This document shows positions 6,096-63,832 of a stretch of DNA of 64,000 nucleotides, in pieces. This DNA is from Haliotis rufescens (lineage: Eukaryota), in NCBI RefSeq assembly GCF_023055435.1, contig NW_025964223.1, positions 23,746,001 to 23,810,000 on the forward strand, in the 5' to 3' direction. The position numbers and the translations under genes are program-made. Each line of letters starts with the position of its first letter. Within the stretch, counting starts at the first letter, position 1. The notes beneath the pieces are model-generated. The model ran no database searches, was not told where the DNA came from, and worked only from the letters and a program-made list of their open reading frames with translations.

Positions 6096-8159
6096 ATGAA
6101 GGCTGCTGTTATTCTTGCTGTTCTTGCTGCAGTGCTGTGCGGTGAGTTAAATTCTTTTCCATCTGCTGCCTTTTGTGTGATGGCCATCATGTGCCTCACT
6201 CTATAATGTGGAGCCGTATCACTCTGGGTACATGTGATTTTATGCATCCCTCGTTAGGTATTATAAAACCACATGTTCCGAGTGATCCTGCTACAACGGA
6301 TTTTTTAATATGACATTGTAAAAGAATGAAAACAAATGCAAAATTGATAGAACACAGATGTTCGATTGAGCTGAGGTTAACGTGTGCTAGATCATGTGAC
6401 TTTACATTTACTCGATAAAGGCGTACGGTCTTCCGCTTCGAAGCGGGGTGTAAGGGATTTATTCTTACTCTTAGAAATCCACGTGCTGTCTTTTATGGTC
6501 GTGGCGGGGTATAAGGGATTTATTCTCCCTCTCGGCAATACACGTGCAGTCGGTGTCCTTTGTGGCGGGGTACAAGGGATTGATTCTCCCGCTGAGAAAT
6601 GTATTTCACTCCAAGGCGGGATACACAGTATTTTCTCAAGATCAGATCTCATCATTCTGAAATGGAGGTATGAAGGTGTAATCCGAAGTATGACATTGTT
6701 ACTTCCGCGAAACGTTCTTTTGAATTTCAGATTAATTCTGATTTCCATCCATTGGTTTTCAGCATCACACCCGTGCTTGTTGGTTTCAGGAGAAGCAAAC
6801 ACAAAATTTGCTTTCAAAGTGTCAGCAAAGGTATTCTGTGTAGAACCTATTCATTGCAACAGCCTAGTGCTTGCGTCCCTGGTTAGGTTTTATAAAATCA
6901 CATGTACCGAATCATCCTACCACAACAAAAAGTGTAATATAACATTGTAAAAGAACAAAAACAAATGCAAAATTGGTAGAACACAGCTGTTCGATTGAGC
7001 CGAGGTAAACGTATGCTATGTCATGTGACGTGCATTGACTCGGAAAAAGCGTACGGCTTTTCGCTTCAACGCGGGGTGTAAGGGATTTATTCCGCCTTTC
7101 CCTAATCCTCATGTGGTCTGTCTTGGTCGTGGAGCTATGATAATAGAATTTATACTTTACTTAGAAAGTGTAATGCGAAGTGTGACATTGTTACATCCGC
7201 GAAACGTTGTTTTGAATTTCAGATAAGTTCTGATTTCGAGTTTTTGGTTTTCAGCATCACACCCGAGCTTGTTGGTTTCAGGAGGACTCGACCGCGTCCT
7301 TATGAAGCAAACACAAAATGTGCATTTAAAGTGTCGGTCAAGGTATACTGTGTAGAACCTATTCATTGCAACAGCCTAGTGCTTCCCGAGGGACTTGTGA
7401 CGGATAGACATGTCATTCTTCCCCTAATCTCTCTTCACAGCCAGCACTGTCAATTGTGACTGCATTTGTTCCCGCATCCTTGACCCAGTCTGTGACACCG
7501 CCGGCAACTACTACGACAACGCGTGCCTGTTGAACTGCGTTGAGTAAGTATATCAATGACTATTTTTACAGAAATCCTTCACATAATTTCATTTGGCACT
7601 AAGAGTATCGAATCAAAGTAGAATTCATCCCGATTATAACAGGTTAAGAATATAGTGATTAATCACTCACAAAACCGTAATTAATCCCATTTTGCGGTTT
7701 GATTGTTAATGTGAAAATGTAAAGTGATAACATCAGCCGTCGCCCTTTTGTCCTTTTGTTGTATATGATCATGGTAAATACATAAATATTATCTCCATGA
7801 TCTGGACAGTCACTGACATTACGTCCATTTCCCCATTATGTCATGTGCATATAATTGTTCACTTTGGCGGCATAAACATGTATTCAATAGACTAATGCAG
7901 GGAAGTCAATAAGCAGGGCAACATGTTTGGGGATTTTTCTCGTGTCTGCAGATCCAATCGCTTAGATTGAGTTCAATGAAACGACACTTTTATCAATACA
8001 TAATGTTATGTATTCTAGCTACATTAAAGGAAATGTACCAGTAGCACCAATTCCTCATTCGTGACTCACGATGGATCTTCACTTTGCAGGGGTGCCGTCT
8101 TGGCCGCAGAAGGCGCCTACACCGTCAGTGCCAACTCTTGCGTTGCTGCCAGGAAGTAG
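6096..8159 (+). CDS. K1: secreted single-domain Kazal-type protease inhibitor precursor, 72 aa, 3 exons
   Basis: Exons 6096-6141, 7441-7543, 8090-8159; GT-AG introns of phase 1 and 2. Translation MKAAVILAVLAAVLCASTVNCDCICSRILDPVCDTAGNYYDNACLLNCVEGAVLAAEGAYTVSANSCVAARK*. Hydrophobic signal peptide, Kazal Cys pattern, TATAAA at 6022, AATAAA at 8227. Confidence 0.9.
6441..6640 (+). repeat. Degenerate ~60-bp minisatellite in K1 intron 1 (also K3, 18731-18925)
   Basis: Core gcggggt(g/a)(t/c)aagggatt(t/g)attct at ~6442, 6504 and 6565, with a weaker copy at 6616. Confidence 0.75.
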
Positions 8160-8232
8160 ATGACCATCACCTTCACCTTTGACAAAATGGAGCTTCCCCG
8201 ACCACAGAAGCACATATTGCTTGAGCAATAAA
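8160..8232 (+). terminator. Conserved 3'UTR with AATAAA polyadenylation signal (K1 shown)
   Basis: AATAAA at 8227-8232, ~68 nt after the stop. The same UTR and hexamer occur in the paralogues, with variants in K2 and K8. Confidence 0.75.
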
Positions 8233-8802
8233 ATTTAGAAGCAATCCATCTGGTCATGTCTATATTTCTGATTTTATTAATACTGATGGCTGTCCACAGG
8301 ATTAGATACAAAACATGTAATTTTGAACTGAGCCATCATTCGATACGACAGAATGTGCTTTTGGCTGATAACTTGCACAGAAAAAGGTCAACACATGTGT
8401 CTCTGTGGGGATAGGCTGAATATATCACACATCTGTTTGCGATTATGCAAGCTTATTTGAAAATGTAAGTGGACTATATTTCCCTTGCACAGTCGAAATG
8501 AGGGGTGGGGGGGGGAGGTGGGGGGGGGGGGGGGGGGTGCAGTTATAAGGCGAAAGCCTTCCCTCCACACAGGAGCATACCGAAGAACATCACGGTAGCC
8601 CGTTCAACTACTGATCAAAGTGTATTGCAGTCTCAACTCCTTAGTATACATCCCTGATGCCGCCAATAATGTGATACAATTAATGGTGCAAGGTATATAA
8701 GCCCTGATGGCTAAATACACTGTAAAGTCTTGGAGGAAAATATGTATACATTTAAAGGGTTGATTATTCACCAATCAACCCAGACTGGATACGACAAGGG
8801 AG

Positions 8803-14087: not shown

Positions 14088-14477
14088 CTCCGACAATTTT
14101 GTTCTGAGTATCCCATACTCGTTATGTGAAGGGACTCAAAGAGAATCGGGTGGAAACAATGGAGACCTGTGGAAAATATAGTCTACTCACACTTTCAATC
14201 CTGCTCACATAATCGAAAACAGATGTGAGATATATTCAGCCTACTCTACAGGGAAAAATGTATTGACCTTAGTCTGTTATACATTCTGTCGTGTCGTGTT
14301 GAATCGGGATACAGTTCAGGATAAACTTGATTTGTATTTAACCTTGTCGAAACTCGACGGGATCAATAAATATACATGAAAAACAGACATGACCATATGT
14401 ATTGCTTCTATATTATATTGCACAACCAATATGTGCTTCTGTAATCGGAGACGCTCCATTTGGTCAAAGGTGAAGGT

Positions 14478-15384
14478 GGCAACAACACAAGAGTTGACAC
14501 TGAAGGTGTAGGCCCCTCCTGCGCCCTGCAATGTGAGGCAAGATGGAGAAATTGTTACTGGTTTTATTTCCTTAAATTTAGTTAGATAACATAGGATGCA
14601 TTAATATAAAAGGCATATTTATCGAGGTTTTTTAAAATCAATCTATGCGATTAGATCTCTACACGTGACAAAAATAAATCCAAAACATGCTTACATGAAC
14701 TTCCTACCCTTGTCCTTGTCTAACAAATCGCAAAGAGAACCATCGTATTAATAATCATTGGGATTAATTGCGGTTTCACTATAGTCGACAAATCACAATA
14801 TTCTAGCCTGTCATATCTGGGATGAACTCTACTTTGCTTTGATACTCCCCTTGCTAGGGTCGAGTTATGAGACGGTTCGCTGTAAGAATTTCAGGGATAT
14901 ACCTACTCAACGCAGTTCAACTGGCACGCGTTGTCGCGGTGTCACCGACGGGGTCAAGGATGCGGGAACAAAGGCAGTCACAGTTGACAGTGCTGGCTAT
15001 GAAGAAATATGAGGTGTAGAATGATATGTCTAATCTGATACTGGTTCCTCGGGAAGCACTTTGTCTTTGAAAGGATTTTTTTCCACACAATATACCTTGA
15101 CCGACACTTTAAATCGACGACTTTTGATTTCTAAATGTAAAACATTATCGATGTGGCTTCACTTCGACACAGTCAATCTGAGACCAACGGGTACGGGAGG
15201 GATGGGGAGAAACTGGTGACAAACGAATACTGGATTCAAAACTATGTGAGGTTTCTGGCTCGCATAACTCAGCGGTGACCCGTGGGAAAATGCACAACGG
15301 ATTGTGCATGTGCATTTGAATATACCTGATAAAACAGAGCTTAAACTCACCGCACAGAACCACAGCAAGAACAGCAGCCTTAAT
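14478..15384 (-). pseudogene. K2: Kazal-type inhibitor pseudogene
   Basis: Exon 1 (15384-15351) has ATG>ATT and a 9-nt deletion. Exon 2 (14996-14907) is 90 nt instead of 103 (13-nt frameshifting deletion) and has CysIII>Gly. Exon 3 (14525-~14478) has deletions including the stop codon. PolyA signal is changed to AATATA. Confidence 0.9.
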
Positions 15385-15713
15385 CTTGATACAAAAGGTG
15401 GAGCTTCTTTTCCGAACAGGATCAAAGTATCGAATGGATTGAAATCTCCGCATTTATACACTACACAAGCCCATATAACATACTAATTCATGTAATATAT
15501 AGCTCCTCGGTCGATTTTGTAATCGAAGATATAATTAGAGGCATCGTATAAATGACTATTTCACAAGAGGTGAAGTGCACATGAATTCACATCACTCACT
15601 CGCTCGCCCTGTCTCAAACTTACTCACTCATTCACTCAACCTCTAACTCACGCTATAACTCTCTAACTCACTTACTCTCCAAATCATTCAGTCACTCAAT
15701 CTCTAACTCATTC

Positions 15714-18425: not shown

Positions 18426-20151
18426 ATGAAGGCTGCTGTTATTCTTGCTGTTCTTGCTGCGGTGCTGTGCGGTGAGTTTAATCCTTTTCTATCTGATGCC
18501 TTTGTGTGATGGCCATCATGTGCTACACTCTTTAGGTTGTTGTAGTACCGCTCTGGGTACATGTGATTTTATGCATCCCTCGTTAGCTTTTATAAAATCA
18601 TATGTACCGAGGGATCCTGCTACAACGATTATTTTAATATGACATTGTAAAAGAATGAAAACAGGTTAATGTGTGCTATGTCATGAGACTTTCATTGACT
18701 CGGAAAAAGCGTACAGTGGTTTGCTTCAAAGCGGGGTGTAAGGGATTTATTCTATATCTCAGAAATCCACGTGTTGTCTGTCTTGGTCGTGGCGGGGTAT
18801 AAGGGAGTTATTCTCCTTCTCAGCAATACATGTGCAGTCGGTGTTCTTCGTGGCGGGGTACAATGCATTGATTCTCCCGCTGAGAAGTGTATTTCACTCC
18901 AAGGTGGGATACATAGTAATTTATCAAGATCAGATAACCTACCTATGTTATCCCACTCATGTATGCCCTTGTTGTTACTGTTAATCCTCTACTGTTAATC
19001 CTCCACTTGCTATATATATTCTGCACTATGTCCCTCATTCAGTCTTGCTTGACAACGGTATAAGGATCTTTACCGAAACGTCGCTTTTTACAGTATTAAA
19101 GAAGTTGTTATCCATAAAATTGTGTCTATCTTGTCAAGATCAGATCAGACCATTTTGACATGGATGTATGGTAATAGAATTTATACTTTACTTAGAAAGT
19201 GGAATCCGAAGCATGACATTGTTCCTTCCGCGAAACGTTCTTTTGAATTTCAGATTAGATCTGATTTCGACCCTTTAGTTTTTAGCATCACACCTGAGCT
19301 TGTTGGTTTCAGGAGGACTCGACCGCGTCCTTATGAAGCAAAAACAAAATGTGCATTTAAAGTGTCGGTCAAGATATACTGTGTAGAACCTATTCATTGC
19401 AACAGTGCTTGCTGAGGGACCTGTATCAGGATAGACATATCATTGTAACCCCTAATCTCTCTTCACAGCCAGCACTGTCAACTGTGACTGCATTTGTTCC
19501 CGCATCCTTGACCCTGTCTGTGACACCGCCGGCAACTACTACGACAACGCGTGCCTGTTGAACTGCGTTGAGTAAGTATATCAATGACTATTTTATAGAA
19601 ATCCTTCACATAACTCCACCCAGCACGAGTATTAAATCAATATATAACTCACCCCGACTATAACAGGTTAAGAATATGGGGATTGGTCACCCGAAAAACC
19701 GTAAAGTGATAACATCAGCCGTAGCCCTTTTGTCTTTTTTTGTATATGATCATGGTAAATACATACATTATATCTCCATGATCTCGACAGTCACTAGAAT
19801 GACGTCCATTTTCCCCTTCAAGAATTATGTCATTTGCATATATCTGTTTCATTTGGCGGCATAAACATGTATTCAATAGACAAAGGCAGGAAAGTCAATA
19901 AGCAGGGCAACATGTTTGGGGATTTTTGTCGTGTCTGTAGATCCAATTGCTTGTATTGAGTTTAATGAAACGACACCTTTATCAGCTATACATAATCTTA
20001 TGTAATGTAACTACAATAAAGGAAATGTACCAGTAGCACGAATTCCTCATTCGTGACTCACGACTGATCTTCACTTTGCAGGGATGCGGTCCAGGCCGCA
20101 GAAGGCGTCTACACCGTCAGTGCCAACTCTTGCGTTGCTGCCAGGAAGTAG
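18426..20151 (+). CDS. K3: secreted Kazal-type inhibitor precursor, 72 aa
   Basis: Exons 18426-18471, 19469-19571, 20082-20151. Translation MKAAVILAVLAAVLCASTVNCDCICSRILDPVCDTAGNYYDNACLLNCVEDAVQAAEGVYTVSANSCVAARK*. TATAAA 18352, AATAAA 20213. Confidence 0.9.
18936..19133 (+). mobile_element. Short Penelope-like retroelement end in K3 intron 1
   Basis: Flanked by the direct repeat tcaagatcagat and absent from the K1 intron. Contains cttgacaa-[stem-loop]-ccgaaacgtcg followed by attaaa. Confidence 0.55.
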
Positions 20152-23845: not shown

Positions 23846-23986
23846 NNNNNNNNNNNNNNNNNNNNNNNNNNNNNNNNNNNNNNNNNNNNNNNNNNNNNNN
23901 NNNNNNNNNNNNNNNNNNNNNNNNNNNNNNNNNNNNNNNNNNNNNNNNNNNNNNNNNNNNNNNNNNNNNNNNNNNNNNNNNNNNNN
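23846..23986. other. Assembly gap (141 N)
   Basis: Run of N next to the pentamer repeat. Confidence 1.

Positions 23987-24131: not shown

Positions 24132-24133
<2 letters not shown>

Positions 24134-24187
<54 letters not shown>
24134..24187. repeat. (CT)n microsatellite
   Basis: Direct reading. Confidence 0.95.
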
Positions 24188-46566: not shown

Positions 46567-46741
46567 CAGTTAACTACGGTTATAACGAACTCAAAGGGAC
46601 TACTAATTTTAGAACGTTATAACCGTAATTCGTTATAAGCATATATACAGCATAACTACAGCATATAGTCGGGACTAAAAAGTTAGTTCGTTATATCCGT
46701 TAGTTCGTTATAAGCGTGTTCGTTATAACCGTAGTTTACTG
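46567..46741. mobile_element. pogo/Tigger-like MITE copy
   Basis: As 37249-37423. Confidence 0.85.
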
Positions 46742-48476: not shown

Positions 48477-48823
48477 ATGACGTTCACCTTCACCTTTAAC
48501 CAAATGGAGCGTCCCCGACTACAGAAGCACATACTGGTTGTGCAATAAAACATAGAAGCAATCCATCTGTCTGTTTTTCATGTATATTTACATCTTCCCG
48601 AGCAAGAGAGTTAACTGACTATAAAAGTCCAGTTTCCAACCTTGCCGAACTAGGCTGGTATAATGGAGTTACATTTTGCTAGACTAACGAGTCTATGCAT
48701 AGTCCAATCAAAATCGCGCAACGAAATGATGACATTTGTTTTTAGGCAAAAGTCTCTCCGCCACAGAGGGGCATGTCAAAGCCGATTATGATATCCCGTT
48801 CTGATCACAACTGTTCACAATGT

Positions 48824-49828
48824 AATAATTCTTTAATTTGAAGTTTACACGATATACGGCTTTTCCATTGGACGAGTGGTCGGTCGCATGACCGCGAAAT
48901 TGACGTTCATAAGTGTATGAACGACACAATTTGACGTTCATACGTTTTTCACGAAATCGTGTTCTTGAAATGACGTAAACTCTGACGGACTACTTCCACA
49001 TTCCTTGGGAAACCCCTGGGAATTCCCTAGCACGAAAACATACATAAGCGTTCTTTCTGATCGTTTAGAACCTTTATAATTGGTCTCAGCGTTTCAGTCT
49101 ACATTGAGAAATGTCAGAGAGCATGACTGCATGATTGTTCACGAATAGCCTCGCTGCGGCCTATCCTAATGAACAAACGAAGAAATGCACATCTAAACTA
49201 TCGTGGTATCGACTCAATCCGTGCCTAGGCTGACATTGACCGTGTCCAGCAATCTACGCATTTACCTTGGTGTCTGTTTGACGCATCTTTAATCACCTTT
49301 CAATAATCGGTCAGTTGATCAATGATGACTAACACATGTAACCGCCACAGGTTCATTAACAACTTCGGAAATCCTCCCGTCACGTTTATCGTGTCGGCCA
49401 TTTTCACGTCTTGTACTTGATGTAAAGGTATTACGATGCGCTTTCATTGTGACTGACTTGCAGAGGTAGTTCTTTACAGACCTTTCTCATCTATTGGTGA
49501 TATAATTTGAACACATGTGTTGCGTAAGATGTTTCTGAAGAGCAAGTTGTGCATCCATACGCTCATGTTACCTCTCCTTTTGGGAAACTATTTTATTCCG
49601 CGATACAGCTGGTCGTTGTTTGGCTGTCAGTGACAACATGAAGTCACACGTACTAAATAAAATTGTGTTTAGATCTTGGCCTACATCCTTTGAGGTAGGA
49701 AATTTTGATATAAAATTATAAGAATTGACTTTCACTTTGTCGCAAGCTCCGACGTTCATACAGTTTGGCCCTCACTCTACGAAGGTTCATACTCCAATGA
49801 ACTCACACAAAGTGAAGGTCAATTCTTA
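48824..49828. mobile_element. ~1-kb non-autonomous insertion with a terminal hairpin and no clear TSD
   Basis: Absent from the empty site caatgtattgaag (~30887). Ends in the inverted repeat taagaattgactttcactttgt...acaaagtgaaggtcaattctta. Copies at ~39441-40426 (5'-deleted) and ~58206-59209. Confidence 0.7.
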
Positions 49829-50324
49829 ATTGAAGTTGTCAATTCATTAGTATATATTCCTGATACCGTCATTGATGTGATACAATTAATATAGTGGCAA
49901 GGAACATCATCCCTAATGGTTAATCACACTGTTAGGTCTTGGGGTAAAGCTTCCGGTAAGTTAATTAAAGACAAATTATGTAGACATTAAAAGGGTTGCT
50001 TATTCACCAATCAACCCAGACAGGATACGACAAAGGGAGGACAGACTAGAGAGTTGACTGACCACTGGCCATTCTCTGCCATCATTGTTTCATTCCAATC
50101 TTCATTCAGTCCCCTCCTACAACACGCATGAGCATAAATTGTTCGGAATGTTGGCGCACGTAAATGCAATGTTGCAGTAACGTATATATTTCCATCAAAT
50201 AGGGAGTCAACCGGCTTTGTTGTGTAGAGGATAGGGCATCTGTCCAGAGAGAGAGTGAAAGGGTCCGTGGTTCAATCCCCTGCCCCGTCATATCAAAAGA
50301 CGTGAACATATGGTCACGTGATTA

Positions 50325-52320
50325 GGTTCACTGTGGGTGTTGTGATTCTGATCTGGGAAAAGGTTTCAGACATATTTCATGGACTACCAACCTGATAAGT
50401 ATGCCAGCATTCGGATTTACTAACATAAACATTGCTATCACAGTTTGGAGAGGTCGAGTCGGTTGTTTTGTCCCTCGGGGCGGACAACCACCATGCATAT
50501 ACCTCGGTACACAGCTATCATGTCGGATGCCTTTGGCGTTTTGCCTGCTTTTTTGTAGTTAACATTCTTACTTGCCTCAGGGTCCATCTATAACACCCAC
50601 AGTTCAGGATACAAGGGTTCAAACTATGTTATCTTTTCAGAATGTTTCAGATCAATGTTTGACTCTTGACAATGAGACCACTATTAGTTACCTCGCTAAA
50701 ACACCAGTTTCGTGACGAGAAAGTGAAGTTGAGAAAACACGTACATGTTTTTGACTTGGGAATACAAACTGATAATCTGGAGGCTCAGTCCCGGCGTTGC
50801 AACTTTTCATGGGCTGTCAGATTGAAACAGAGAACAGGGTGTGGGATTTTATGTGCTCGTCACTGAACATCAGCTCCTCCAGCAAAGATGGTATTGAGCG
50901 TACCCTAAGACTGCATATCACGCATTGGGAACAGACATGTGATTGTCAAATTTACCTTCTTTTTTGATAATTCTGAAATATTGACATATTGAACAAAAAA
51001 TTGAAAAAAAATGAACAATTTCGAGTGTCTGAGGATTTTACAGAGCGAATGCGACAGACAGATCAAAATTGATCACCTTCATAATGATAGCGAGGGGTGA
51101 CAAAAAAGTCTCGCGTATGAGCTATGGCAAGTTTGTTATCGATGATACGTGGATTGATGATTACATTGTCACAGACAATAATTCTGGACATACCGTTATG
51201 TATATGAAATCAAACCTGAATTATAATACAGATTTCAAACACTGTATAATAGATTTGACAACCAGATCTCTGCACAACAGACTGTGGAACTAGCACATAA
51301 ATATGGTGGTGTCAATGTAGATACCAACCTTGATACTACAGGTTGATACTAACCAGATCTCAGATGGAATACCAGATTCAACCACTTTTCATCATCAAGA
51401 AGAAAGTACACAAAACTGTTGTTAGGTAAGACCTAGTGAAAACACTGCCTCAATACCAGACATAAATATAACTGATATTATGAGTGGCAACAGTGCCTCA
51501 GTTAGAAAAAATGTTATTACCACCATGTGCTCATGGAATATTAACGGCTTCTTCTCAAAAATTGAGTATTCGGATTTTGCTCTCTTTGGCAAATTATGAG
51601 ACATTTTTTGGTGAATAGAGATAACGCGTATGAATGTGCATGATATTTTGCAAAATTTATTTAACGACTGTGAAATATTTAGTATCTCCCACTTCCTTAA
51701 GAGAGTCTGATAATGCTCTGTCTTTCAGGGTGAAGAATGAGTTGTCCCCCTTACATATTTCCTTCTGTTTGTTTCTATCAACCCTGAGGGTTCACCAGTA
51801 TATTCAGAGAAGAGAATTGAATTGACACGCTCGAAAGGCAATTTATCAACATTCTTCATGCTAATGGCGATTCATTCGAATTTGTATTGTGTGGAGATTT
51901 CATTGCCAGGCAGATTGGAAATCAGTTAGTTAAATCATTAAAGTTCATGTTGATTATTTACCTATTGACAAGGACAATAAAACCGATAACTTCTCTTGTT
52001 CTCAACAATCTTTAGATAAAGTCATAAACAACAATTGCCTAAATCTATTAGATATGTGTATGATACTTAGCATCCTTATAGTTAATATAAAATTAATCAG
52101 ACATCACAGGCGATCTGACTTGTGTATGGCATTCTGGATGCAGCGTTGTTGAAAATTTTATCATTTCTACTAATATTTTTACAAACATACCAGACATATA
52201 CAATAGACTGATGTCTCAAATTGGGATCAGAAAAGACACATCTTCCTGTATTCTTCAGAAAAATATATGTTGGTAATATAGAGAATAACCTTCGCACATC
52301 CTGTTATTACCTATCATGTG
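50325..52320 (+). mobile_element. Paralogous APE-LINE remnant
   Basis: Near-identical to 40915-42900. Confidence 0.7.
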
Positions 52321-52714
52321 TACCTCATGAGTTCATGTTAAAAGTCGGTTGAATTATTTCTTGAAGGGGGTATGGACGTTTTCTCTGATGTGATGTGATG
52401 TGACGTTACGTTACGTGATGACCACCTCTCACAAGACAATCTATGATCTGAGTATGCCGTGTTTGTTGTTTGAGGGGACTTAATGTGAGATGTATTCAGC
52501 CTACTCTACAGAGACAAATGTATTGACCTCATTCTGTAATACATTCTAGTCGTGTCGTGTCAAATTGGAATACAGTTCAAGATAAATTTGATAATTATTT
52601 AACCTTGTCGACATTCAACGGTATCACTGAATATAAATAAAAACATAGACATGACCAGATGGATTACTTAAATATTTTATTGCACAATCAATCAAAGGTG
52701 AAGGTGAAAGTCAT

Positions 52715-54326
52715 CTACTTCCTGGCAGCAACGCAAGAGTTGGCACTGAAGGTGTATGCGCCTTCTGCGGCCTGGACGGCACCCCTACAATGTAAAGGTT
52801 CATGGTGAGGAAGAATGAAAAATTGTAACTGGTACATTCCCTTCAATTTTGTTAGATTACACAACATGTGTTTTTCCTAATTACGGCAGAAAAGGATATT
52901 TATCGTTTCATTAAAATCAATCAATGCGATTAAATCTTGAGACACGGCAAAAATAACACCAAAACATAGTTACACGGTAATTAAATTTCCTGCCCTTGTC
53001 TACTGGATTAATGTTTTTGCTGTCAAATGAAGCACAGTCTAGACGACATATTTATTGAAGCAAGGGGGGGGGGGGGGGGGGGGGGGTGTTTAGAGAGGAC
53101 TGTCAAGATAATGGGGGTTGAATGTTAAATTGTATGTCTTTACCATGACCATTCAAAACAAAAGGACATAAGTGCTACGACTTATGTTATCACTTTACAT
53201 TTTTACGTTGGCTTAGCAAATCGCAAAGAGAACCATCGTATTAATCATCATTGGGATTAATTGCGGTTTCGTTACAGTCGACTATATTCTAGCCTGTTAT
53301 ATTTGGGATGGACTCTAGTTTGCTTTGACACTCTTAGCGCTAGAGTTATGAGACGTATCTCTGTAAAAGTATTTCATTGATATACTTACTCAACACAGTT
53401 CAACTGACACGAGTTTTCGTAGTAGTTGCCGGCGGTGTCACAGACGGGGTCAAGGATGCGGGGACAAAGGCAGTCACAGTTGACAGTGCTGGCTATGAAG
53501 AGACATGAAGGATAGAATGATATGTCTATCCTGATACAGGTCTCTCAGCAAGTATAAGCTTGTTGCAAGGAATATTTTCCACACAGTCTACCTTGTCACA
53601 CACTTTAAATGAACATTTTGTCGAGTTGCGAACCTTGGGCATGCAAGAAACCTATGATCGTGGGTTTGAATCCCGGTTCGCCCCGATTATGTTTCTAGGT
53701 TAGTCAGCACTATACTCATGTTCGTGCGTTTCACCAAAGTGGTAAACGTTTGAGTCGTGCAACACTTTGGGCTTTCCTCCCACGTTAAGCTGACACGCCA
53801 TCATATGATTCGAATACCGCAAAAGGCGGCATTAAACCCAACTCACTCACTCATTCACTATGACTACTAAATGTAAAACGATAGCTATGTAGCTTTATGG
53901 CTGGCTGTGAAGAAATATGAGGGGTAGAATGATATTGCTCAGGAAGCACTTGGTTTTTGCAAGGAATATTTTCCAAACAATATACCTTGATCGACACTTT
54001 AATTGACGACTTTTAGTTAGTAAATGTAAAACGATATAAATTTACTTCATGCAGACGTGGTTCATCTGAAACTGACTAATATGGGTGTGGTGGTGACACT
54101 AATAAGGATCGAAATCAGAAAAAATCTGGGCTTAAAAATTATAAGAGGGTTCTGACTCAACTAACTCTGGCGACTTCCTCCATCTCAGGCGACAGAGTCA
54201 ATTATGACCCGTGGGAAAATGCACAAGGGATTGTGCATGATACATTTGAATATAACTGATGAAACAGAGCTCAAACTCACCACACAGCACCGCAGCAAAA
54301 ACAGCAAGAATAACAGCAGCCTTCAT
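52715..54326 (-). CDS. K10: secreted Kazal-type inhibitor precursor, 72 aa
   Basis: Exons 54326-54281, 53492-53390, 52784-52715. As K8 except YYDN>YYEN; 34-nt deletion in the 3'UTR. Confidence 0.9.
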
Positions 54327-55944
54327 CGTGATGCCAAAGGATGGAGCTTCTCTTCCGAACAGGATCAAAGTATCGAATGGATTCAAATGTCTGTATTTAT
54401 ACACTACATACGGCCCATAAAATACTAATTCAAGTAATATATAGCTCCTCGGTCGATTTTTAAGTCGAGGATATATTGTATCCTCAAGCACCGGGTTGCT
54501 ATAAGTAGTTTGTGTCGCGTACTACCAACTTCATATCAACATAAAAACAATCTCATGTGAACGTAAAACTATATTTATTATTCAAACAACATGTTTTGCC
54601 ATAGCATCCACTTTGGGTCAATTTGGAGCTTTGTTTTCAGACTTGCAGGTGTTACTGAGTTTTCGATGCCCGGTTTCAAATATTAACATTTCAGGGCATC
54701 GAATATTCAATAACATCCGATAATCGAAAACACGAAATGTTTCTCGACATTGCAAAATACAGAAGTTGTAATCTTCTGCAGCACTCTCTCTTGATGTGAA
54801 CTCTCACAGTTGTGAGGCAGACATGTCGTCACTCTGCAATGGGCTGACGTCATGCTGGAATACTTTGACGCCTGGTACAACTGAACTCATATTGTTGGCA
54901 GAATGTGGAAAAAACAAGTAAACGAAAATTGGTCTGAAACATATTGATCCAACTGGATAATTATTTAACGTGTCACTGCCATGAAGGCATAATCACAACA
55001 ACAAAAATGGCTTCATCCACCTCTTGATTCACATGAGTAAAAAACAATCTCAACGGTCAACCCATTACACAATGGTAGCATGACAGAGGATAGAACTTAC
55101 AGCTTATAACTTATAACACAAAGAGGTGAGCAGCAATTATTCCAAGCAGGATGTTGGCATCATCGGCTTATTTCTCCACAACGAATTGCGCTTCGCGTAC
55201 CCTGATGTTATGGAGTCTCTGATTTTGCAACCTCTGTCAGTTGTAAAAGGTAAAGTGATGCGTAATGACGTTTAACGCCGCGTTGAATAGTATTGCACTT
55301 ACAAAGCGACATGCACTAGTTCGGACCAGTGCCGATTTTATAGTGCTAGCCAACTGAGATGCCATGCTTCAGTTTGACATGAACACAATGACAGAGTATA
55401 CTGCGAGCCGGACCTGTCCTTGTGTTTAAGTCCCTAAATGCTGAGTGCCCGACAGAATAACAACAAATAATCTTTTCACGTCATTTGGTGTGATGCAGCC
55501 GGGGATCGAACCCCGACCCTCCGCTCTCTGGGCAGACACTCAGCCACTGGATCTCGGGGGTGGTCCAGTTGTAATAAATATGCAACAATGGTGGTTCATT
55601 TGGAACATAAATGCACTGTGTTTCGATATAGAGCTAGCATTCCTGTCAATGCATGTCATTTGTATAATGATGTGGGGAAAAAACTTGATGTGATCCTAAT
55701 AAAATCCAGCCATCTGATTGCAGAACTCATATAAATCGGTTAGTCCTCCTACCTATGCCTATATGACGTCATCTGCTTGTCACGTCATATTTGACATGGT
55801 TCCCATTTTGAGTTAACATACAGATCTCACTGGCGTCATAAGGTAGAATTGATATTGTCAAACAAACATAGTTCAAAACACGTCGTGAAAATGAATATAA
55901 ACTGGGGAGCAAAATAGAATACACCGAGTTTGTTTTTTCGTGTA

Positions 55945-56119
55945 CAGTTAACTACGGTTATAACGAACTCAAAGGGACTACTAATTTTAGAACGTTATAA
56001 CCGTAATTCGTTATAAGCATATATACAGCATAACTACAGCATATAGTCGGGACTAAAAAGTTAGTTCGTTATATCCGTTAGTTCGTTATAAGCGTGTTCG
56101 TTATAACCGTAGTTTACTG
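55945..56119. mobile_element. pogo/Tigger-like MITE copy
   Basis: As 37249-37423. Confidence 0.85.
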
Positions 56120-56733
56120 TAATTGAAAATTAAAAGAACTATTGTTAAATTTGCCTACTTGACCATCAACCATTCCTTCAAATGTTATAAAATTGTGTTC
56201 AGAAAAAATTATTTTCCTAAGTTACCAATTACCAGCATCGTATGATTTTGGGGGGAAAATAATTAAAAGTTATCCCCAAAAAAATATTTAAAATAATAAA
56301 ACCTTGTAGAAGTATTATTTGAGTGCTGACTAAGCGCCGGTATAGTTCATTTTGGGGAAATAATATGTCTAACTTGTGATATTTTTATTTGAAAATCATT
56401 CATATGGTAAAATCCACTGAGAGGTATTGTTTCATTTGATCCTCAGATTAACTGAACATTTCAGAACAGCCTTCAACCTTCGATCTCGCTTTGTGTAAAC
56501 CCATTCAGCTAGTCCGGTATACCTGGGTAATGGCACATCAACTACTCACCACAACCTCGTGCATAACACATAAAGTTTTAAGAGAATTTAAAATCATACC
56601 TTACAAATCGGCTAAGGAGACATTTATCTCTTTAATTCTTTATGTGTGCTTGTGTGGTGTATAAATGCGGAGATTTCAATCCATTCGACACTTTGATCCT
56701 GTTCGGAAGAGAAGCTCCACCTATAGCATCAAT

Positions 56734-57858
56734 ATGAAGGCTGTCGCTATTCTTGCTGTTCTTGCTGTTGTGCTGTGCGGTGAGTTTAACTTTTGTTTTA
56801 GAAGTTCTATTCCAATGTATATCCAGAATCTGTTGTGCATTTTCCAAGGGTTTACATTTGGCCCAATCGTCAGTCGATGTGTCCATAGAGCCAGAATACT
56901 CTCAAATTTGTTTTCAATCCCAGATTCGTTCTGATATTAATCCTTGGTTCGTCGGCATCCCACCCGTGCTTGTTGGTTTCAGAAGGAGTCGGCCTAGTCC
57001 TAATAAAGTTTCATAGCTATCGTTTTACATTTAGTAATCCCAGTGAGGGAGTGAGTTGAGTTTAACGCCACCTTTTGTGGTATTCCAATTGTCAGCTGAC
57101 GGCGTGTCAGTTGAATGGAGGAGGAAAGCCCGAAGTGATCCACAACTCAAACGTTTACCACTTCGGTGAAACTCACAAACATGAATATGGTACCGACAAA
57201 CCTGGAAACATAATTGGTGCGAACTGGGATTAGAACCCACTATCATAGGTTTCTTGCGTACCTAAGGGACGCAACTCTGCAAAGCGGATGGACCACGACA
57301 CATAGCTATACTTTTAGTAATTAAAAGCCGTCCATTTAAAGTGTGTATTGTGTGGAAAAGATTCATTGTAACTTCATTGTGCTTGCTGAGGGACCTGTAT
57401 TAAGATAGAAATATCATTCTACCTTTCATCCCTCTTCACAGCCAGCACTGTCAACTGTGACTGCCTTTGTCCCCGCATCCTTGACCCCGTCTGTGACACC
57501 GCCGGCAACTACTACGACAACTCGTGCCAGTTGAACTGCGTTGAGTAAGTATATGCATAAAATATGCTTACAGAGATTCCTCTCATACCTCCATTCTAGT
57601 ACTAGGAGTATCAAATCAAAGTAGAGTTCATCCCAGATTAGAATATGGTGGTTAATCATCGCCGGTAACGAAACTGCAGCTAACCTATATGACGATTAAA
57701 TACCACGGTACTTTTTGTGATTTGAAAGTCAAATGTAAATTGATCCAAAAGGTGAAAATGGTCATCACGATGAACCTTTACATTGTAGGGGTGCCGTCCA
57801 GGCCGCAGAAGGCGCCTACACCTTCAGTGCCAATTCTTGTGTTGCTGCCAGGAAGTAG
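56734..57858 (+). CDS. K11: secreted Kazal-type inhibitor precursor, 72 aa
   Basis: Exons 56734-56779, 57442-57544, 57789-57858; protein identical to K7/K9. Confidence 0.9.
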
Positions 57859-59707
57859 ATGACGTTCACCTTCACCTTTAACCAAATGGAGCGTCCCCGA
57901 CTACAGAAGCACATACTGGTTGTGCAATAAAACATAGAAGCAATCCATCTGTCTGTTTTTCATGTATATTTACATCTTCCCGAGCAAGAGAGTTAACTGA
58001 CTATAAAAGTCCAGTTTCCAACCTTGCCGAACTAGGCTGGTATAATGGAGTTACATTTTGCTAGACTAACGAGTCTATGCATAGTCCAATCAAAATCGCG
58101 CAACGAAATGATGACATTTGTTTTTAGGCAAAAGTCTCCCCGCCACAGAGGGGCATGTCAAAGCCCATTATGATATCCCGTTCTAAACACAACTGTTCAC
58201 AATGTAATAATTCTTTAATTTGAAGTTTACACGATATACGGCTTTTCCATTGGACGAGTGGTCGGTCGCATGACCGCGAAATTGACGTTCATAAGTGTAT
58301 GAACGACACAATTTGACGTTCATACGTTTTTCACGAAATCGTGTTCTTGAAATGACGTAAACTCTGACGGACTACTTCCACATTCCTTGGGAAACCCCTG
58401 GGAATTCCCTAGCACGAAAACATACATAAGCGTTCTTTCTGATCGTTTAGAACCTTTATACTTGGTCTCAGCGTTTCAGTCTACATTGAGAAATGTCAGA
58501 GAGCGTGACTGCATGATTGTTCACGAATAGCCTCGCTCCGGCCTATCCAAATGAACAAACGAAGAAATGCACATCTAAACTATCGTGGTATCGACTCAAT
58601 CCGTGCCTAGGCTGACATTGACCGTCTCCAGCAATCTACGCATTTACCTTGGTGTCTGTTTGACGCATCTTTAATCACCTTTCAATAATCGGTCAGTTGA
58701 TCAATGATGACTAACACATGTAACCGCTACAGGTTCATTAACAACTTCGGAAATCCTCCCGTCACGTTTATCGTGTCGGCCATTTTGACGTCTTGTACTT
58801 AATGTAAAGGTATTACGACGCGCTTTCATTGTGACTGACTTGCAGAGGTAGTTCTTTACAGACCTTTCTCATCTATTGGTGATATTATTTGAACACATGT
58901 GTTGCGTAAGATGTTTCTGAAGAGCAAGTTGTGCATCCATACGCTCATGTTCTTTTCATTTTGGGGAACTATTTTATTCCGCGATATAGCTGGTTGTTGT
59001 TTGGCTGTCAGTGTAAACATGAAGTCACACGTACTAAATAAAATTGTGTTTAGATCTTGGCCTACATCCTTTGAGGTAGGAAATTGTGATATAAAATTAT
59101 AAGAATTGACTTTCACTTTGTCGCAAGCTCCGACGTTCATACAGTTTGGCCCTCACTCTACGAAGGTTCATACTCCAATGAACTCACACAAAGTGAGGGT
59201 CAATTCTTAATTGAAGTTGTCAATTCATTAGTATATATCCCTGATACCGTCATTGATGTGATACAATTAATATAGTGGCAAGGAACATCATCCCTAATGG
59301 TTAATCACACTGTTAGGTCTTGGGGTAAAGCTTCCGGTAAGTTAAAGACAAATTATGTAGACATTAAAAGGGTTGCTTATTCACCAATCAACCCAGACAG
59401 GATACGACAAAGGGAGGACAGACTAGAGAGTTGACTGACCACTGGCCATTCTCTGCCATCATTGTTTCATTCCAATCTTCATTCAGTCCCCTCCTACAAC
59501 ACGCATGCTGAACTCAGAGCATAAATTGGTCGGAATGTTGGCGCACGTAAATGCAATGTTGTAGTAACGTATATATTTCCATCAAATAGGGAGTCAACCG
59601 GCTTTGTTGTGTAGAGGATAGGGCATCTGTCCGGAGAGAGAGTGAAAGGGTCCGTGGTTCCATTCCCTGCCCCGTCATATCAAAAGACGTGAACATATGG
59701 TCACGTG

Positions 59708-61700
59708 ATTAGGTTCACTGTGGGTGTTGTGATTCTGATCTGGGAAAAGGTTTCAGACATATTTCATGGACAACCAACCTGATAAGTATGCCAGCATTCG
59801 GATTTACTGACATAAACATTGCTATCACAGTTTGGAGAGGTCGAGTCGGTTGTTTTGTCCCTCGGGGCGGACAACCACCATGCATATACCTCGGTACACA
59901 GCTATCATGTCGGATGCCTTTGGCGTTTTGCCTGCTTTTTTGTAGTTAACATTCTTACTTACCTCAGGGTCCATCTATAACACCCACAGTTCAGGATACA
60001 AGGGTTCAAACTATGTTATCTTTTCAGAATGTTTCAGATCAATGTTTGACTCTTGACAATGAGACCACTATTAGTTACCTCGCTAAAACACCAGTTTCGT
60101 GACGAGAAAGTGAAGTTGAGAAAACACGTACATGTTTTTGACTTGGGAATACAAACTGGTAATCTGGAGGCTCAGTCCCGGCGTTGCAACTTTTCATGGG
60201 CTGTCAGATTGAAACAGAGAACAGGGTGTGGGATTTCATGTGCTCGTCACTGAACATCAGCTCCTCCAGCACAGATGGTATTGAGCGTACCCTAAGACTG
60301 CATATCACGCATTGGGAACAGACATGTGATTGTCAAATTTACCTTCTTTTATGATAATTCTGAAATGTTGACATATTGAAAAAAAGAAAAGAAAATGAAC
60401 AATTTCGAGTGTCTGACGATTTTACAGAGCGAATGCGACAGACAGATCAAAATTGATCACCTTCATAATGATAGCGAGGGGTGACAAAAAAGTCTCGCGT
60501 ATGAGCTATGGCAAGTTGGTTATCGATGATACGTGGATTGATGATTACATTGTCACAGACAATAATTCTGGACATACCGTTATGTATATGAAATCAAACC
60601 TGAATTATAATACAGATTTCAAACACTGTATAATAGATTTGACAACCAGATCTCTGCACAACAGACTGTGGTACTAGCACATAAATATGTTGGTGTCAAT
60701 GTAGATACCAACCTTGATACTACAGGTTGATACTAACCAGATCTCAGGTGGAATACCAGATTCAACCACTTTTCATCATCAAGAAGAAAGTACACAAAAC
60801 TGTCGTTAGGTAAGACCTAGTGAAAACACTGCCTCAATACCAGACATAAATATAACTGATTTTATGAGTGGCAACAGTGCCTCAGTTAGAAAAAATGTTA
60901 TTACCACCATATGCTCATGGAATATTAACGGCTTCTTCTCAAAAATTGAGTATTCGGATTTTGCTCTCTTTTGCAAAATATGAGACATTTTCTGGTGAAT
61001 AGAGATAACGTGTATGAATGTGCATGATATTTTGCAAAATTTATTTAACGACTATGAAATATTTAGTATCTCCCACTTCCTTAAGAGAGTCTGATAATGC
61101 TCTGTCTTTCAGGGTGAAGAATGAGTTGTCCCCCTTACATATTTCCTTCTGTTTGTTTCTATCAACCCTGAGGGTTCACCAGTATATTCAGAGAAGAGAA
61201 TTGAATTGACACGCTCGAAAGGCAATTTATCAACATTCTTCATGCTAATGGCGATTCATTCGAATTTGTATTGTGTGGAGATTTCATTGCCAGGCAGATT
61301 GGAAATCAGTTAGTTAAATTATTAATGTTCATGTTGATTATTTACCTATTGACAAGGACAATAAAACCGATAACTTCTCTTGTTCTCAACAATCTTTAGA
61401 TAAAGTCATAAACAACAATTGCCTATATCTATTAGATATGTGTATGATACTTGGCATCCTTATAGTTAATAGAAGAATTAATCAGACATCACAGGCGATC
61501 TGGCTTGTGTATGGCATTCTGGATGCAGCGTTGTTGAAAATTTTATCATTTCCACTGATATTTTTACAAACATACCAGACATATACAATAGACTGATGTC
61601 TCAAATTGGGATCAGAAAAGACACATCTTCCTGTATTCTTCAGAAAAATATATGTTGGTAATATAGAGAATAACCTTCGCACATCCTGTTATTACCTATC
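59708..61700 (+). mobile_element. Paralogous APE-LINE remnant
   Basis: Near-identical to 40915-42900. Confidence 0.7.
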
Positions 61701-62235
61701 ATGTGTACCTCATGAGTTCATGTTAAAAGTCGGTTGAATTATTTCTTGAAGGGGGTATGGACGTTTTCTCTGATGTGATGTGATGTGACGTTACGTTACG
61801 TGATGACCACCTCTCACAAGACAATCTATGTTCTGAGTATGCCGTGTTTGTTGTTTGAGGGGACTTAATGTGGAACGGGTGGAAACATCATTCGTCAGTC
61901 ATCATTACGTCTGCAAAAGGGAGATATAGGCCATTCACACTTTCAATTCTGCTTACAGTATCGCAAACAGATGTGAGATGTATTCAGCCTACTCTACAGA
62001 CACAAATGTATTGACCTCATTCTGTAATACATTCTGTCGTGTCGTGTCGAATTGGAATACAGTTCAAGATAAATTTGATAATTATTTAACCTTGTCGACA
62101 TTCAACGGTATCACTGAATATAAATAAAAACATAGACATGACCAGATGGATTACTTAAATATTTTATTGCACAATCAATATGTGCTTCTGTAGTCGGGGA
62201 CGCTCCATTTGGTCAAAGGTGAAGGTGAAAGTCAT

Positions 62236-63832
62236 CTACTTCCTGGCAGCAACGCAAGAGTTGGCACTGAAGGTGTATGCGCCTTCTGCGGCCTGGACGG
62301 CACCCCTACAATGTTAAGGTTCATCGTGAGGCAAGAATGAAAAATGTAACTGGTACATTCCCTTCAATTTTGTTAGATTACACAACTTTTTTTTTTCATA
62401 ATGACAGCACAAAAGGATATTTATCGTTCCATTAATGCGATTAAATCTTGAGTCAAGGTAAAAATAACACCAAAACATGTTTACACGGTAATTGAATTTC
62501 CTGCCCTTGTCTACCGGATTCATGTTTTTGCTGTCAAATGAAGCAGATATATGTAGACGACATATTTATTGAAGCAAGGGGGAGAGGTTTCGTGGGGGTG
62601 GGAATGGGTGGGGTGTTTAGAGTGACTGTCAGGATAATTCGGGTTGAATGTTAAATTGTATGTCTTTACCATGACCATTCAAAACAAAAGGACATAAGGA
62701 CATCACTTTAGATATTTACGTTGGCTCAGCAAATCGCAAAGAGAACCATCGTATTAATCATCATTGAGATTAATTGCGGTTTCGTTACAGTCGACTGGAT
62801 TGTAGCCTGTTATATTTGGGATAGACTCTAGTTTGCTTTGACACTCTTAGCGCTTGAGTTATGAGACGTATCTCTGTAAAAGTATTTCATTGATATACTT
62901 ACTCAACACAGTTCAACTGACACGAGTTGTCGTAGTAGTTGCCGGCGGTGTCACAGACGGGGTCAAGGATGCGGGGACAAAGGCAGTCACAGTTGACAGT
63001 GCTGGCTATAAAGAGACATGAAGGATAGAATGATATGTCTATCCTGATACAGGTCTCTCAGCAAGTATAAGCTTGTTGCAAGGAATATTTTCCACACAGT
63101 CTGCCTTGTCACACACTTTAAATGAATATTTTGTCGAATTGCGAACCTTGGGCATGCAAGAAACCTATGATCGTGGGTTTGAATCCCGGTTCGCCCCGAT
63201 TATGTTTCTAGGTTAGTCAGCACCATACTCATGTTCGTGAGTTTCACCAAAGTGGTAAACGTTTGAGTCGTGCATCACTTCGGGCTGACGTTAAGCTGAC
63301 ACGCCATCATATGATTGGAATACCGCAAAAGGCGGCATTAAACCCAACTCACTCACTCATTCACTATGATTACTAAATGTAAAACGATAGCTATGTAGCT
63401 TTATGGCTGGCTGTGAAGAAATATGAGGGGTAGAATGATATTGCTCAGGAAGCACTTGGTTTTTGCAAGGAATATTTTCCAAACAATATACCTTGATCGA
63501 CACTTTAATTGACGACTTTTAGTTAGTAAATGTTTAACGATATAAATTTACTTCATGCAGACGTGGTTCATCTGAAACTGACTAATATGGGCGTGGTGGT
63601 GACACTAATAAGGATCGAAATCAGAACAAATCTGGGCTTAAAAATTATAAGAGGGTTCTGACTCAACTAACTCTGGCGACTTCCTCCATCTCAGGCGACA
63701 GAGTCAATTATGACCCGTGGGAAAATGCACAACGGATTGTGCATGATACATTTGAATATAACTGATGAAACAGAGCTCAAACTCACCACACAGCACCGCA
63801 GCAAAAACAGCAAGAATAACAGCAGCCTTCAT
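62236..63832 (-). CDS. K12: secreted Kazal-type inhibitor precursor, 72 aa
   Basis: Exons 63832-63787, 63005-62903, 62305-62236; protein identical to K8. Confidence 0.9.

What the first reader, a model, noticed from the sequence alone, without database searches (positions are those of the whole stretch)
6096..63832. Hidden 12-copy array of tiny secreted Kazal-type genes in strictly alternating orientation
Seen: twelve three-exon genes alternate +/- without exception, 11 intact with identical exon lengths (46/103/70 nt). They form head-to-head pairs 2-3 kb apart and tail-to-tail pairs 4-6 kb apart. None appears as a correct ORF in the six-frame track, and genes this small are easily missed by annotation. 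Known: the C-x-C-P-[K/R]-I-L-x-P-V-C motif is that of short non-classical Kazal inhibitors such as leech-derived tryptase inhibitor. Inference: this is a lineage-specific, recently amplified secreted antiprotease system (mucus, haemolymph, gamete or shell-matrix defence) built by tandem amplification of an inverted gene pair. The left edge of the array is at ~3.7 kb; it runs off the right edge. I cannot tell from the sequence whether the family has been described.
Basis: partly seen in the sequence, partly recalled or inferred. Interest (0 to 1): 0.9.

Follow-up and report, generated by a model that had tools for sequence, protein, structure and literature searches.

The report
Abalone array of tiny Kazal genes
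A stretch of the red abalone genome holds about twenty very small genes for secreted Kazal-type protease inhibitors, arranged as back-to-back pairs that were copied again and again; the genes look functional and seem absent from public protein sets, but this is an ordinary kind of gene-family expansion.

Summary
The window holds 12 three-exon genes (46/103/70 nt, GT-AG) in strict +/- alternation. Eleven are intact and one (gene 2) is a pseudogene. The array continues to the right with 5 more intact genes. Three older paralogues with the same layout flank it, giving 20 genes in 10 head-to-head pairs over about 105 kb.

Exon 2 alone passes Pfam Kazal_1. Its nearest solved relatives are non-classical Kazal inhibitors (CrSPI-1, infestin, LDTI, dipetalin, rhodniin). 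The P1 residue is Arg in 15 of the 16 intact array genes, which predicts inhibition of trypsin-like proteases.

Exons are more conserved than introns, pN/pS is about 0.27, and TATA boxes and poly(A) signals are kept in nearly all copies. These point to working genes.

Trees of the non-coding DNA show that the unit of duplication is a divergent pair (promoter types A and B), sometimes flipped. This alone explains the strict alternation. Gene conversion is evident.

The genome matches red abalone (xgHalRufe1). The N gap lies in a non-coding spacer and its flanks are collinear with a paralogous unit.

Two protein-database searches found no close match. The scan noted other Kazal clusters elsewhere in this genome.

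Verdict: real, probably unannotated, a new member of a known kind, of moderate interest.

The parts
6096..8159 (+). Gene 1, intact; exons 6096-6141, 7441-7543, 8090-8159; reactive site C-S-R-I-L (P2 Ser, P1 Arg); promoter type C
14469..15396 (-). Gene 2, pseudogene: start codon lost (ATT), 13-nt deletion and Cys->Gly in exon 2, 13-nt and 18-nt deletions in exon 3 (stop codon gone)
18426..20151 (+). Gene 3, intact; exons 18426-18471, 19469-19571, 20082-20151; C-S-R-I-L; promoter type C
23846..23986 (.). Assembly gap (scaffolding join) in the tail-to-tail spacer between genes 3 and 4; it interrupts no exon
   Evidence: assembly method in PMC9709998
24555..26243 (-). Gene 4, intact; exons 26198-26243, 24996-25098, 24555-24624; promoter type B
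28275..29690 (+). Gene 5, intact; exons 28275-28320, 29046-29148, 29621-29690; promoter type A
29332..34308 (.). Convergent 3' ends of genes 5 and 6: 452-nt arms (29332-29783 and 33857-34308) are 96% complementary, against about 80% for A-versus-B introns. This is a gene-conversion tract.
33950..35651 (-). Gene 6, intact; exons 35606-35651, 34624-34726, 33950-34019; promoter type B, intron 2 of type A (mosaic)
38051..39185 (+). Gene 7, intact (reference model); exons 38051-38096, 38769-38871, 39116-39185; TATAAA about 70 nt before the ATG, AATAAA about 70 nt after the stop; promoter type A
43335..44947 (-). Gene 8, intact; exons 44902-44947, 44012-44114, 43335-43404; type B; poly(A) signal reads AATACA
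47352..48476 (+). Gene 9, intact; exons 47352-47397, 48060-48162, 48407-48476; type A
52715..54326 (-). Gene 10, intact; exons 54281-54326, 53390-53492, 52715-52784; type B
56734..57858 (+). Gene 11, intact; exons 56734-56779, 57442-57544, 57789-57858; type A
62236..63832 (-). Gene 12, intact; exons 63787-63832, 62903-63005, 62236-62305; type B
34946..64000 (.). Three young tandem units of about 9.4 kb, each holding a B(-)/A(+) head-to-head pair; 94-98.6% identical; they lie within one gap-free stretch
39441..40430 (.). About 1 kb of interspersed repeat (thousands of candidate copies genome-wide) in the tail-to-tail spacer. A ~185-nt interspersed repeat lies at 37245-37430 in the head-to-head spacer. 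The rest of both spacers is unique to this locus.

Best explanation
This is a real cluster of working genes for very small secreted single-domain Kazal-type serine-protease inhibitors in the red abalone.

Each gene has three exons. Exon 1 encodes a 15-residue signal peptide. Exon 2 encodes the reactive-site loop and Cys1-Cys5. Exon 3 encodes the last strand with Cys6. The predicted mature product has 57 residues, a mass of 5.96 kDa and a pI of 4.2.

It should act by the standard (Laskowski) mechanism. The loop C-P-R-I-L would sit in the protease active site like a substrate. P1 = Arg points to trypsin-like enzymes. Gene 14 (P1 Leu) and the flanking paralogues (P1 Met, Ile) point to other specificities.

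The locus grew by repeated duplication of a divergently transcribed pair (one type-A and one type-B gene), mostly in tandem and twice in flipped orientation. A (-,+) pair stays (-,+) when it is inverted, so strict alternation follows automatically. Gene conversion and purifying selection keep the coding exons nearly identical. Seven genes give the same mature peptide, so the likely benefit is dosage rather than diversification.

Shown here: the gene anatomy, Kazal membership, the duplication history and the signs of selective constraint. Inferred: secretion, inhibition and its specificity, expression, and dosage as the benefit.
For: - Gene models: 16 of 17 array genes have identical exon lengths, GT-AG borders and open frames.
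- Kazal identity: Pfam Kazal_1 at 25.9-27.5 bits on exon 2 alone, cut-off 21.
- Nearest solved relatives: CrSPI-1, infestin, LDTI, dipetalin and rhodniin. The alignments place C-P-R on their C-P-K/R reactive site.
- Cysteine pattern: C1-x-C2-x7-C3-x6-Y-x3-C4-x3-C5-x18-C6, within the range seen in 480 related domains.
- Constraint: mean pN 0.036 against pS 0.133. Type A-versus-B identity is 95.5% for exon 2 and 93.8% for exon 3. It is 90% for the 3'UTR and 88.5% for exon 1. It falls to 84% for the proximal promoter, 79-81% for introns and 71-74% for distal flanks.
- Regulatory signals: TATAAA is kept in every copy and AATAAA in all but genes 2 (pseudogene) and 8. The one pseudogene shows what decay looks like at this locus.
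- Intron 2 has the same position and phase (phase 2, second codon after C5) as the inter-domain introns of a multi-Kazal gene elsewhere in this genome. The phase-1/phase-2 layout matches the one reported for mollusc conkazal and schistosomin genes (PMC12637466).
- Duplication history: promoter clades A and B (SH-aLRT 99-100) have one member in each pair, and pairs 14/15 and 16/17 are flipped.
- Conversion: a 96% inverted tract and incongruent trees for different segments.
- The subfamily occurs only at this locus.
- The assembly comes from 15-kb HiFi reads at 50x coverage (PMC9709998).
Against: - There is no RNA evidence.
- No identical or close protein was found in two very large protein collections. 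This fits non-annotation but equally gives no outside support.
- The youngest units differ by 1.4%, about the same as the reported heterozygosity (1.37%). A haplotype-derived false duplication of one unit cannot be excluded without reads.
- The mature peptide has seven cysteines, one without a partner, which is unusual for a single Kazal domain.
- Inhibitory activity was not tested. Some Kazal-fold peptides have other roles.
- The joined 72-residue product could not be sent to the fold or signal-peptide tools.
Confidence: 0.75

Rival explanations
1. The peptides have a Kazal fold but act mainly as signals (hormone-binding, pheromone or neuroactive peptides) and not as protease inhibitors. Precedents are the cone-snail conkazals, schistosomin, and the female spawn-associated Kazal peptide reported from Haliotis asinina.
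For: - Conkazal-M1 has both protease-inhibiting and neuroactive effects and shares the phase-1/phase-2 intron layout (PMC12637466).
- A small Kazal peptide linked to spawning is cited for H. asinina (Wang et al. 2016, cited in PMC6523705 and PMC5368703). The paper itself is not held.
- The signal peptide starts MKAVA in five genes.
- The conserved odd cysteine could serve in binding or dimerisation.
Against: - The reactive loop C-P-R-I-L is that of proven inhibitors (LDTI, infestin) and is kept in nearly all copies.
- Conkazals and schistosomins have 8 Cys and P1 Glu; these genes have 7 Cys and P1 Arg.
- Exon 2 gave no match to the schistosomin entry, which the conkazal paper says is in the PDB (9FDO), even at E<=10.
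- MKAVA is a short hydrophobic stretch and weak evidence of kinship.
Confidence: 0.12
2. Part of the array is an assembly artefact: one or more of the near-identical 9.4-kb units are the two haplotypes laid in tandem, or units are missing at the N gap.
For: - The youngest units are 98.6% identical, and the reported heterozygosity is 1.37%.
- A scaffolding gap lies inside the array (23846-23986).
Against: - There are three units with graded identity (94%, 97.7%, 98.6%), not two.
- They lie in one gap-free stretch assembled from 15-kb HiFi reads, which are longer than a unit.
- The sequences on either side of the gap are only 74-87% identical to their nearest paralogues, so they are not haplotype copies.
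- Eight other genes are well diverged. At most the count would fall by one or two.
Confidence: 0.07
3. The genes are intact by youth alone and are silent, that is, a dead or dying array.
For: There is no expression data, no match in the protein collections, and one copy is already a pseudogene.
Against: - A-versus-B copies have diverged 20-29% in introns and flanks, yet keep exons at 94-96% identity, pN/pS at about 0.27, all splice sites, the TATA box and, in all but one intact gene, the poly(A) signal.
- The older flanking paralogues still keep the layout.
Confidence: 0.05

Closest known systems
Non-classical Kazal inhibitors of blood-feeding invertebrates: LDTI (leech), infestin, rhodniin and dipetalin (triatomine bugs); and CrSPI-1 (PDB title 'Kazal-type serine protease inhibitor SPI-1'; horseshoe crab from my own knowledge)
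   Same: One residue between Cys1 and Cys2. Reactive loop C-P-(K/R)-I/V-L with a basic P1. The spacing x7 / x6-Y-x3 / x3 is the same. These are the best PDB matches. The C5-C6 loop is long, as in infestin, rhodniin and dipetalin.
   Different: LDTI has a short C5-C6 loop (10 residues, against 18 here). The bug inhibitors are domains of multi-domain precursors, whereas these are single-domain genes. An extra seventh cysteine lies two residues before Cys1. Sequence identity is only about 45-55% over 26 residues. The host is a herbivorous gastropod, so no anti-haemostatic role is expected.
Conkazal (MKAVA conotoxin superfamily) and schistosomin genes of gastropods (PMC12637466)
   Same: Small secreted Kazal-fold peptides of molluscs. 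They have a phase-1 intron right after the signal sequence and a phase-2 intron before the last part of the domain. Tandem copies are reported in some snails. The signal-peptide start (MKAVA) is similar.
   Different: They have eight cysteines with a C-terminal helix and a fourth disulfide, against seven here. Their P1 is Glu, against Arg. Their mature length is about 73 residues, against 57. No similarity of exon 2 to the schistosomin entry was detected.
Tandem expansions of small protease-inhibitor genes in molluscs, for example family I84 in the razor clam (PMC9198434)
   Same: A lineage expansion of secreted inhibitor genes by tandem duplication and divergence.
   Different: It is a different inhibitor family. 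I did not find head-to-head pair units or strict alternation described there (abstract only).
Multi-Kazal gene of the same genome (G000:C246:5.225-5.252 Mb)
   Same: 59% identity to exon 2. It has the C-x-C-P-(R/L)-L-L core and the same phase-2 intron two codons after Cys5.
   Different: It has dozens of repeated domain exons on one strand in one gene, not separate single-domain genes.

Membership tests
Kazal-type serine protease inhibitor domain (Pfam PF00050 / MEROPS I1) | Match to the family profile above the curated threshold | tested here: met
   Exon 2 alone scores 27.5, 25.9 and 26.9 bits (three copies) against a cut-off of 21. Kazal_2 also passes in two of the three copies.
Kazal-type serine protease inhibitor domain (Pfam PF00050 / MEROPS I1) | Six cysteines with spacing C2-x7-C3-x6-Y-x3-C4-x2/3-C5 and a sixth Cys downstream | tested here: met
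   All 16 intact genes have this spacing. C6 lies in exon 3, 18 residues after C5. Among 480 related domains the range is 6-22 residues.
Kazal-type serine protease inhibitor domain (Pfam PF00050 / MEROPS I1) | Disulfide pattern 1-5, 2-4, 3-6 and the alpha/beta fold | not tested
   The joined exon 2 + exon 3 product has no single reference, so it was not sent to the structure tool.
Kazal-type serine protease inhibitor domain (Pfam PF00050 / MEROPS I1) | Canonical inhibition of a serine protease through the P1 residue | not testable with these tools
   P1 (Cys2+2) is Arg in 15 of 16 intact genes and Leu in gene 14. Activity needs a bench assay.
Non-classical Kazal group (LDTI / rhodniin / infestin type) | Only one or two residues between Cys1 and Cys2 | tested here: met
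   The array genes read C-(L/I)-C. PDB alignments pair this with C-A-C of LDTI and infestin.
Non-classical Kazal group (LDTI / rhodniin / infestin type) | LDTI-like short C5-C6 loop (10 residues) | tested here: not met
   Here the loop has 18 residues. It is closer to the long-loop members.
Conkazal / schistosomin clade (PMC12637466) | Eight conserved cysteines, with Glu at P1 | tested here: not met
   The mature product has seven cysteines and P1 is Arg. The clade's features are as stated.
Conkazal / schistosomin clade (PMC12637466) | Phase-1 intron after the signal sequence and a phase-2 intron late in the domain | tested here: met
   Exon lengths of 46 nt and 46+103 nt give phases 1 and 2. 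The feature is shared with other Kazal genes of this genome, so it is not diagnostic.
Conkazal / schistosomin clade (PMC12637466) | Detectable sequence similarity to schistosomin | tested here: not met
   No schistosomin chain appears among 25 PDB matches at E<=10. The conkazal paper says entry 9FDO is in the PDB.

The most novel reading that the evidence does not exclude
The seventh cysteine, two residues before Cys1, is kept in all 17 array genes but is absent from the three older flanking paralogues. It may make these the first Kazal inhibitors that work as disulfide-linked dimers, or that tether covalently to mucus, egg coat or shell matrix. In that reading the array was amplified recently, and may be copy-number polymorphic, as an abalone-specific defence or reproductive factor.
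Probability: 0.12. Interest if true: 0.55.

Novelty: new member of a known kind. Interest (0 to 1): 0.35.

Why it matters
It adds about twenty probably unannotated, probably working inhibitor genes to the reference genome of a declining fishery species. Protease inhibitors are candidates for resistance to bacterial disease and for roles in reproduction.

It is also a clean worked example of two things. First, a divergent gene pair used as the unit of duplication yields perfect orientation alternation. Second, genes with 72 codons split over three exons can escape annotation.

It does not change what is known about Kazal inhibitors or about gene-family evolution.

Tried and rejected
There is therefore no test of splicing, expression, read depth or the gap.
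- The joined 72-residue product was translated only inside scripts from window coordinates. It was not sent to any search, fold, cluster or contig look-up tool.
- The search for homologous proteins with the 51-residue open frame around exon 2 found no protein of 28-89 aa that shares three 5-residue words (one search was a frame slip, corrected).
- The search of protein representatives with exon 2 gave 865 hits. All of the best 150 are multi-Kazal proteins at <=54% identity. A copy about 88% identical would score about 60 bits and would have been listed.
- A paper search by assembly size gave nothing. The species was fixed instead by the match of G000 (1,334,454,214 bases, 615 pieces) to xgHalRufe1 (1,334,471,355 bases, 616 scaffolds).
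- The Has-KPI paper (J Pept Sci 2016) is not held. What I recall of it (a ~5.1-kDa peptide from female gonad and haemolymph) is from memory and was not used as evidence.
- I considered that the extra cysteine is a relic of Cys6 from a lost upstream domain, because multi-Kazal relatives often read C-x-C-x-C (34 cases; the C246 exons). I set this aside as unproven, because the older flanking paralogues lack it.
- Long ORFs in the window (112-672, 6384-6950, 21773-22126) have no Pfam match. ORFs across the gap are artefacts.
- Rfam found only two borderline tRNA-like hits and ARAGORN found none.
Full report
**Observation.**
A six-frame motif scan found nine exact C-x-C-P-R-I-L-x-P-V-C sites. BLAST with one exon-2 region found twelve copies in strict +/- alternation.

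Reading gene 7 by eye gave a three-exon model: 38051-38096, 38769-38871 and 39116-39185. It has strong GT donors and AG acceptors and an open frame of 72 codons. Transferring the model gave eleven intact genes with the same 46/103/70-nt exons, plus one pseudogene, gene 2. Gene 2 has lost its start codon. It also has a 13-nt deletion and a Cys->Gly change in exon 2, and two deletions in exon 3.

ATG-to-ATG distances in head-to-head pairs are 2.0-3.0 kb.

**The gap.**
The N run at 23846-23986 lies in the non-coding spacer between the 3' ends of genes 3 and 4, 569 nt beyond the stop codon of gene 4. Its left flank (23300-23786) matches 12891-13401 of the older paralogous unit. Its right flank (23987-24546) matches 13917-14478, in the same order and strand.

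The join is therefore consistent, and no frame crosses it. By analogy about 450 nt are missing. Hidden extra units cannot be excluded without reads.

**Extent.**
The window is G000:C445:23746001-23810000. A DNA search of the whole assembly found this exon only on this contig, between 23.739 and 23.836 Mb.

I fetched the flanks. Five more intact genes follow at window coordinates 65893-90237, and the alternation continues.

A relaxed Kazal pattern scan then found three older paralogues at about -2.0 kb (-), +94.6 kb (-) and +102.6 kb (+), and a degenerate piece at -7.0 kb. Each has its own signal-peptide exon ending in a phase-1 GT donor.

The locus thus holds 20 genes as ten divergent (-,+) pairs over about 105 kb.

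**What the genes encode.**
Exon 2 alone passes Pfam Kazal_1 (27.5 bits, cut-off 21) and, in two of three copies, Kazal_2. Against all PDB chains its best matches are:
- CrSPI-1
- infestin (E = 9e-6)
- LDTI (E = 5e-5)
- dipetalin
- rhodniin

The alignments put C-P-R-I-L on their C-P-(K/R) reactive sites.

P1 (Cys2+2) is Arg in 15 of the 16 intact array genes. Genes 1 and 3 have Ser instead of Pro at P2, and gene 14 has Leu at P1. The flanking paralogues have Met, Ile and Arg.

The C5-C6 loop has 18 residues. This is within the range of 480 related domains (6-22) but rare there, and longer than LDTI's 10.

The predicted mature product, after a 15-residue signal peptide, has 57 residues, 5.96 kDa and pI 4.2. 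Seven of the sixteen intact genes give the very same mature peptide.

It has seven cysteines. The extra one lies two residues before Cys1. It is present in all array genes and absent from the flanking paralogues.

The joined product has no single reference. I therefore left out structure prediction, exact-sequence look-ups and any search with the joined sequence.

**Are they working genes?**
The indirect evidence is strong:
- Mean pN is 0.036 against pS 0.133.
- Between promoter types A and B, identity is 95.5% for exon 2, 93.8% for exon 3, 90% for the 3'UTR and 88.5% for exon 1. It falls to 84% for the proximal promoter, 79-81% for introns and 71-74% for distal flanks.
- All splice sites are kept in the intact genes. 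A TATAAA about 70 nt before the ATG is kept in every copy. An AATAAA about 70 nt after the stop is kept in all copies except pseudogene 2 and gene 8, which reads AATACA.
- Intron 2 sits in phase 2, in the second codon after Cys5. The inter-domain introns of a large multi-Kazal gene on another contig have exactly this position and phase.
- The phase-1/phase-2 layout is the one reported for gastropod conkazal and schistosomin genes (PMC12637466).

**How the array arose.**
Trees of the 400 nt upstream give two well-supported clades:
- Type A: genes 5, 7, 9, 11, 13, 14 and 16.
- Type B: genes 4, 6, 8, 10, 12, 15 and 17.
- Genes 1 and 3 fall in a separate branch.

Every head-to-head pair from genes 4/5 to 16/17 holds one A and one B gene. 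In pairs 4/5 to 12/13 the order is B(-)A(+). In pairs 14/15 and 16/17 it is A(-)B(+), so those two pairs are flipped.

The unit of duplication is therefore a divergent pair. Such a pair reads (-,+) in either orientation, so strict alternation needs no further explanation.

The youngest event is a triplication of a 9.4-kb unit (34.9-64 kb), with units 94-98.6% identical.

Different segments give different trees. Intron 1 of gene 13 groups with type B and intron 2 of gene 6 with type A. The 3' ends of the convergent genes 5 and 6 share a 452-nt tract that is 96% complementary. Gene conversion, including between inverted copies, is therefore at work.

Apart from a ~1-kb and a ~185-nt interspersed repeat, the spacers are unique to this locus.

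**Species and assembly.**
Earlier notes of this scan called the genome red abalone. I checked this: G000 has 1,334,454,214 bases in 615 pieces. The published primary assembly xgHalRufe1 has 1,334,471,355 bases in 616 scaffolds (PMC9709998).

That assembly used 15-kb HiFi reads at 50x coverage, hifiasm and Omni-C scaffolding. The reported heterozygosity is 1.37%. The youngest units differ by about the same amount, so a haplotype-derived extra unit cannot be ruled out. Three units with graded identity inside a gap-free stretch make it unlikely.

**Known or not.**
- No protein of 28-89 residues in the 5.8-billion-cluster collection shares three pentapeptides with the exon-2 frame.
- No representative among 1.84 billion proteins exceeds 54% identity to exon 2 within the top 150. 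An 88%-identical copy would score about 60 bits and would have been listed.
- Paper searches found no description of this family in Haliotis.
- The conkazal/schistosomin clade shares the intron layout. It differs in cysteine number (8 against 7) and in P1 (Glu against Arg), and shows no detectable similarity to exon 2.

**Verdict.**
What is there is a probably unannotated, multi-stage expansion of single-domain, non-classical, P1-Arg Kazal inhibitor genes, built from a divergent pair.

This is a new member of a known kind. The one odd feature is the conserved unpaired cysteine. Tissue, target proteases and expression remain to be shown.

Noticed in passing
G000:C246:5225700-5252400 (sample in L036:1-5001): A very large multi-Kazal gene. 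It has at least 45 near-identical domain exons on one strand at a period of about 510 nt. Each exon encodes Cys6 of the previous domain plus Cys1-Cys5 of the next, with alternating P1 Arg and Leu, and is joined by phase-2 introns.
   Followed up: partly
L028:4154-7227 (window coordinates about 108150-111230, right of the window): A minisatellite of about 3 kb with a 28-nt period. It is open in several frames on both strands, which gives spurious ORFs of up to 938 codons.
   Followed up: no
window 6443-6600 and 18731-18860: A 61-nt tandem repeat (2-2.6 copies) in intron 1 of genes 1 and 3 only. The surrounding 6384-6950 is open on both strands but has no Pfam match.
   Followed up: partly
window 10740-10811 and 25478-25549: Two borderline Rfam tRNA hits (29-30 bits) that ARAGORN does not call. 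They are probably heads of tRNA-derived SINEs. A similar element lies in intron 1 of gene 7 (about 38380-38620).
   Followed up: no
L023:8338-9465 (window coordinates 78338-79465, gene 15): Extra partial copies of exon 2 lie just downstream of the real exon 2 of gene 15 (79338-79401 and 79438-79465). Similar exon-2 fragments lie in intron 1 of the type-B genes (e.g. 25783-25857 and 44522-44561). These are remnants of small internal duplications.
   Followed up: no
L023:628-6057 (window coordinates 70628-76057, gene 14): Gene 14 has a 4.5-kb intron 2, against 0.24-0.94 kb in the others. It is the only array gene with Leu at P1 and Thr at P2.
   Followed up: partly
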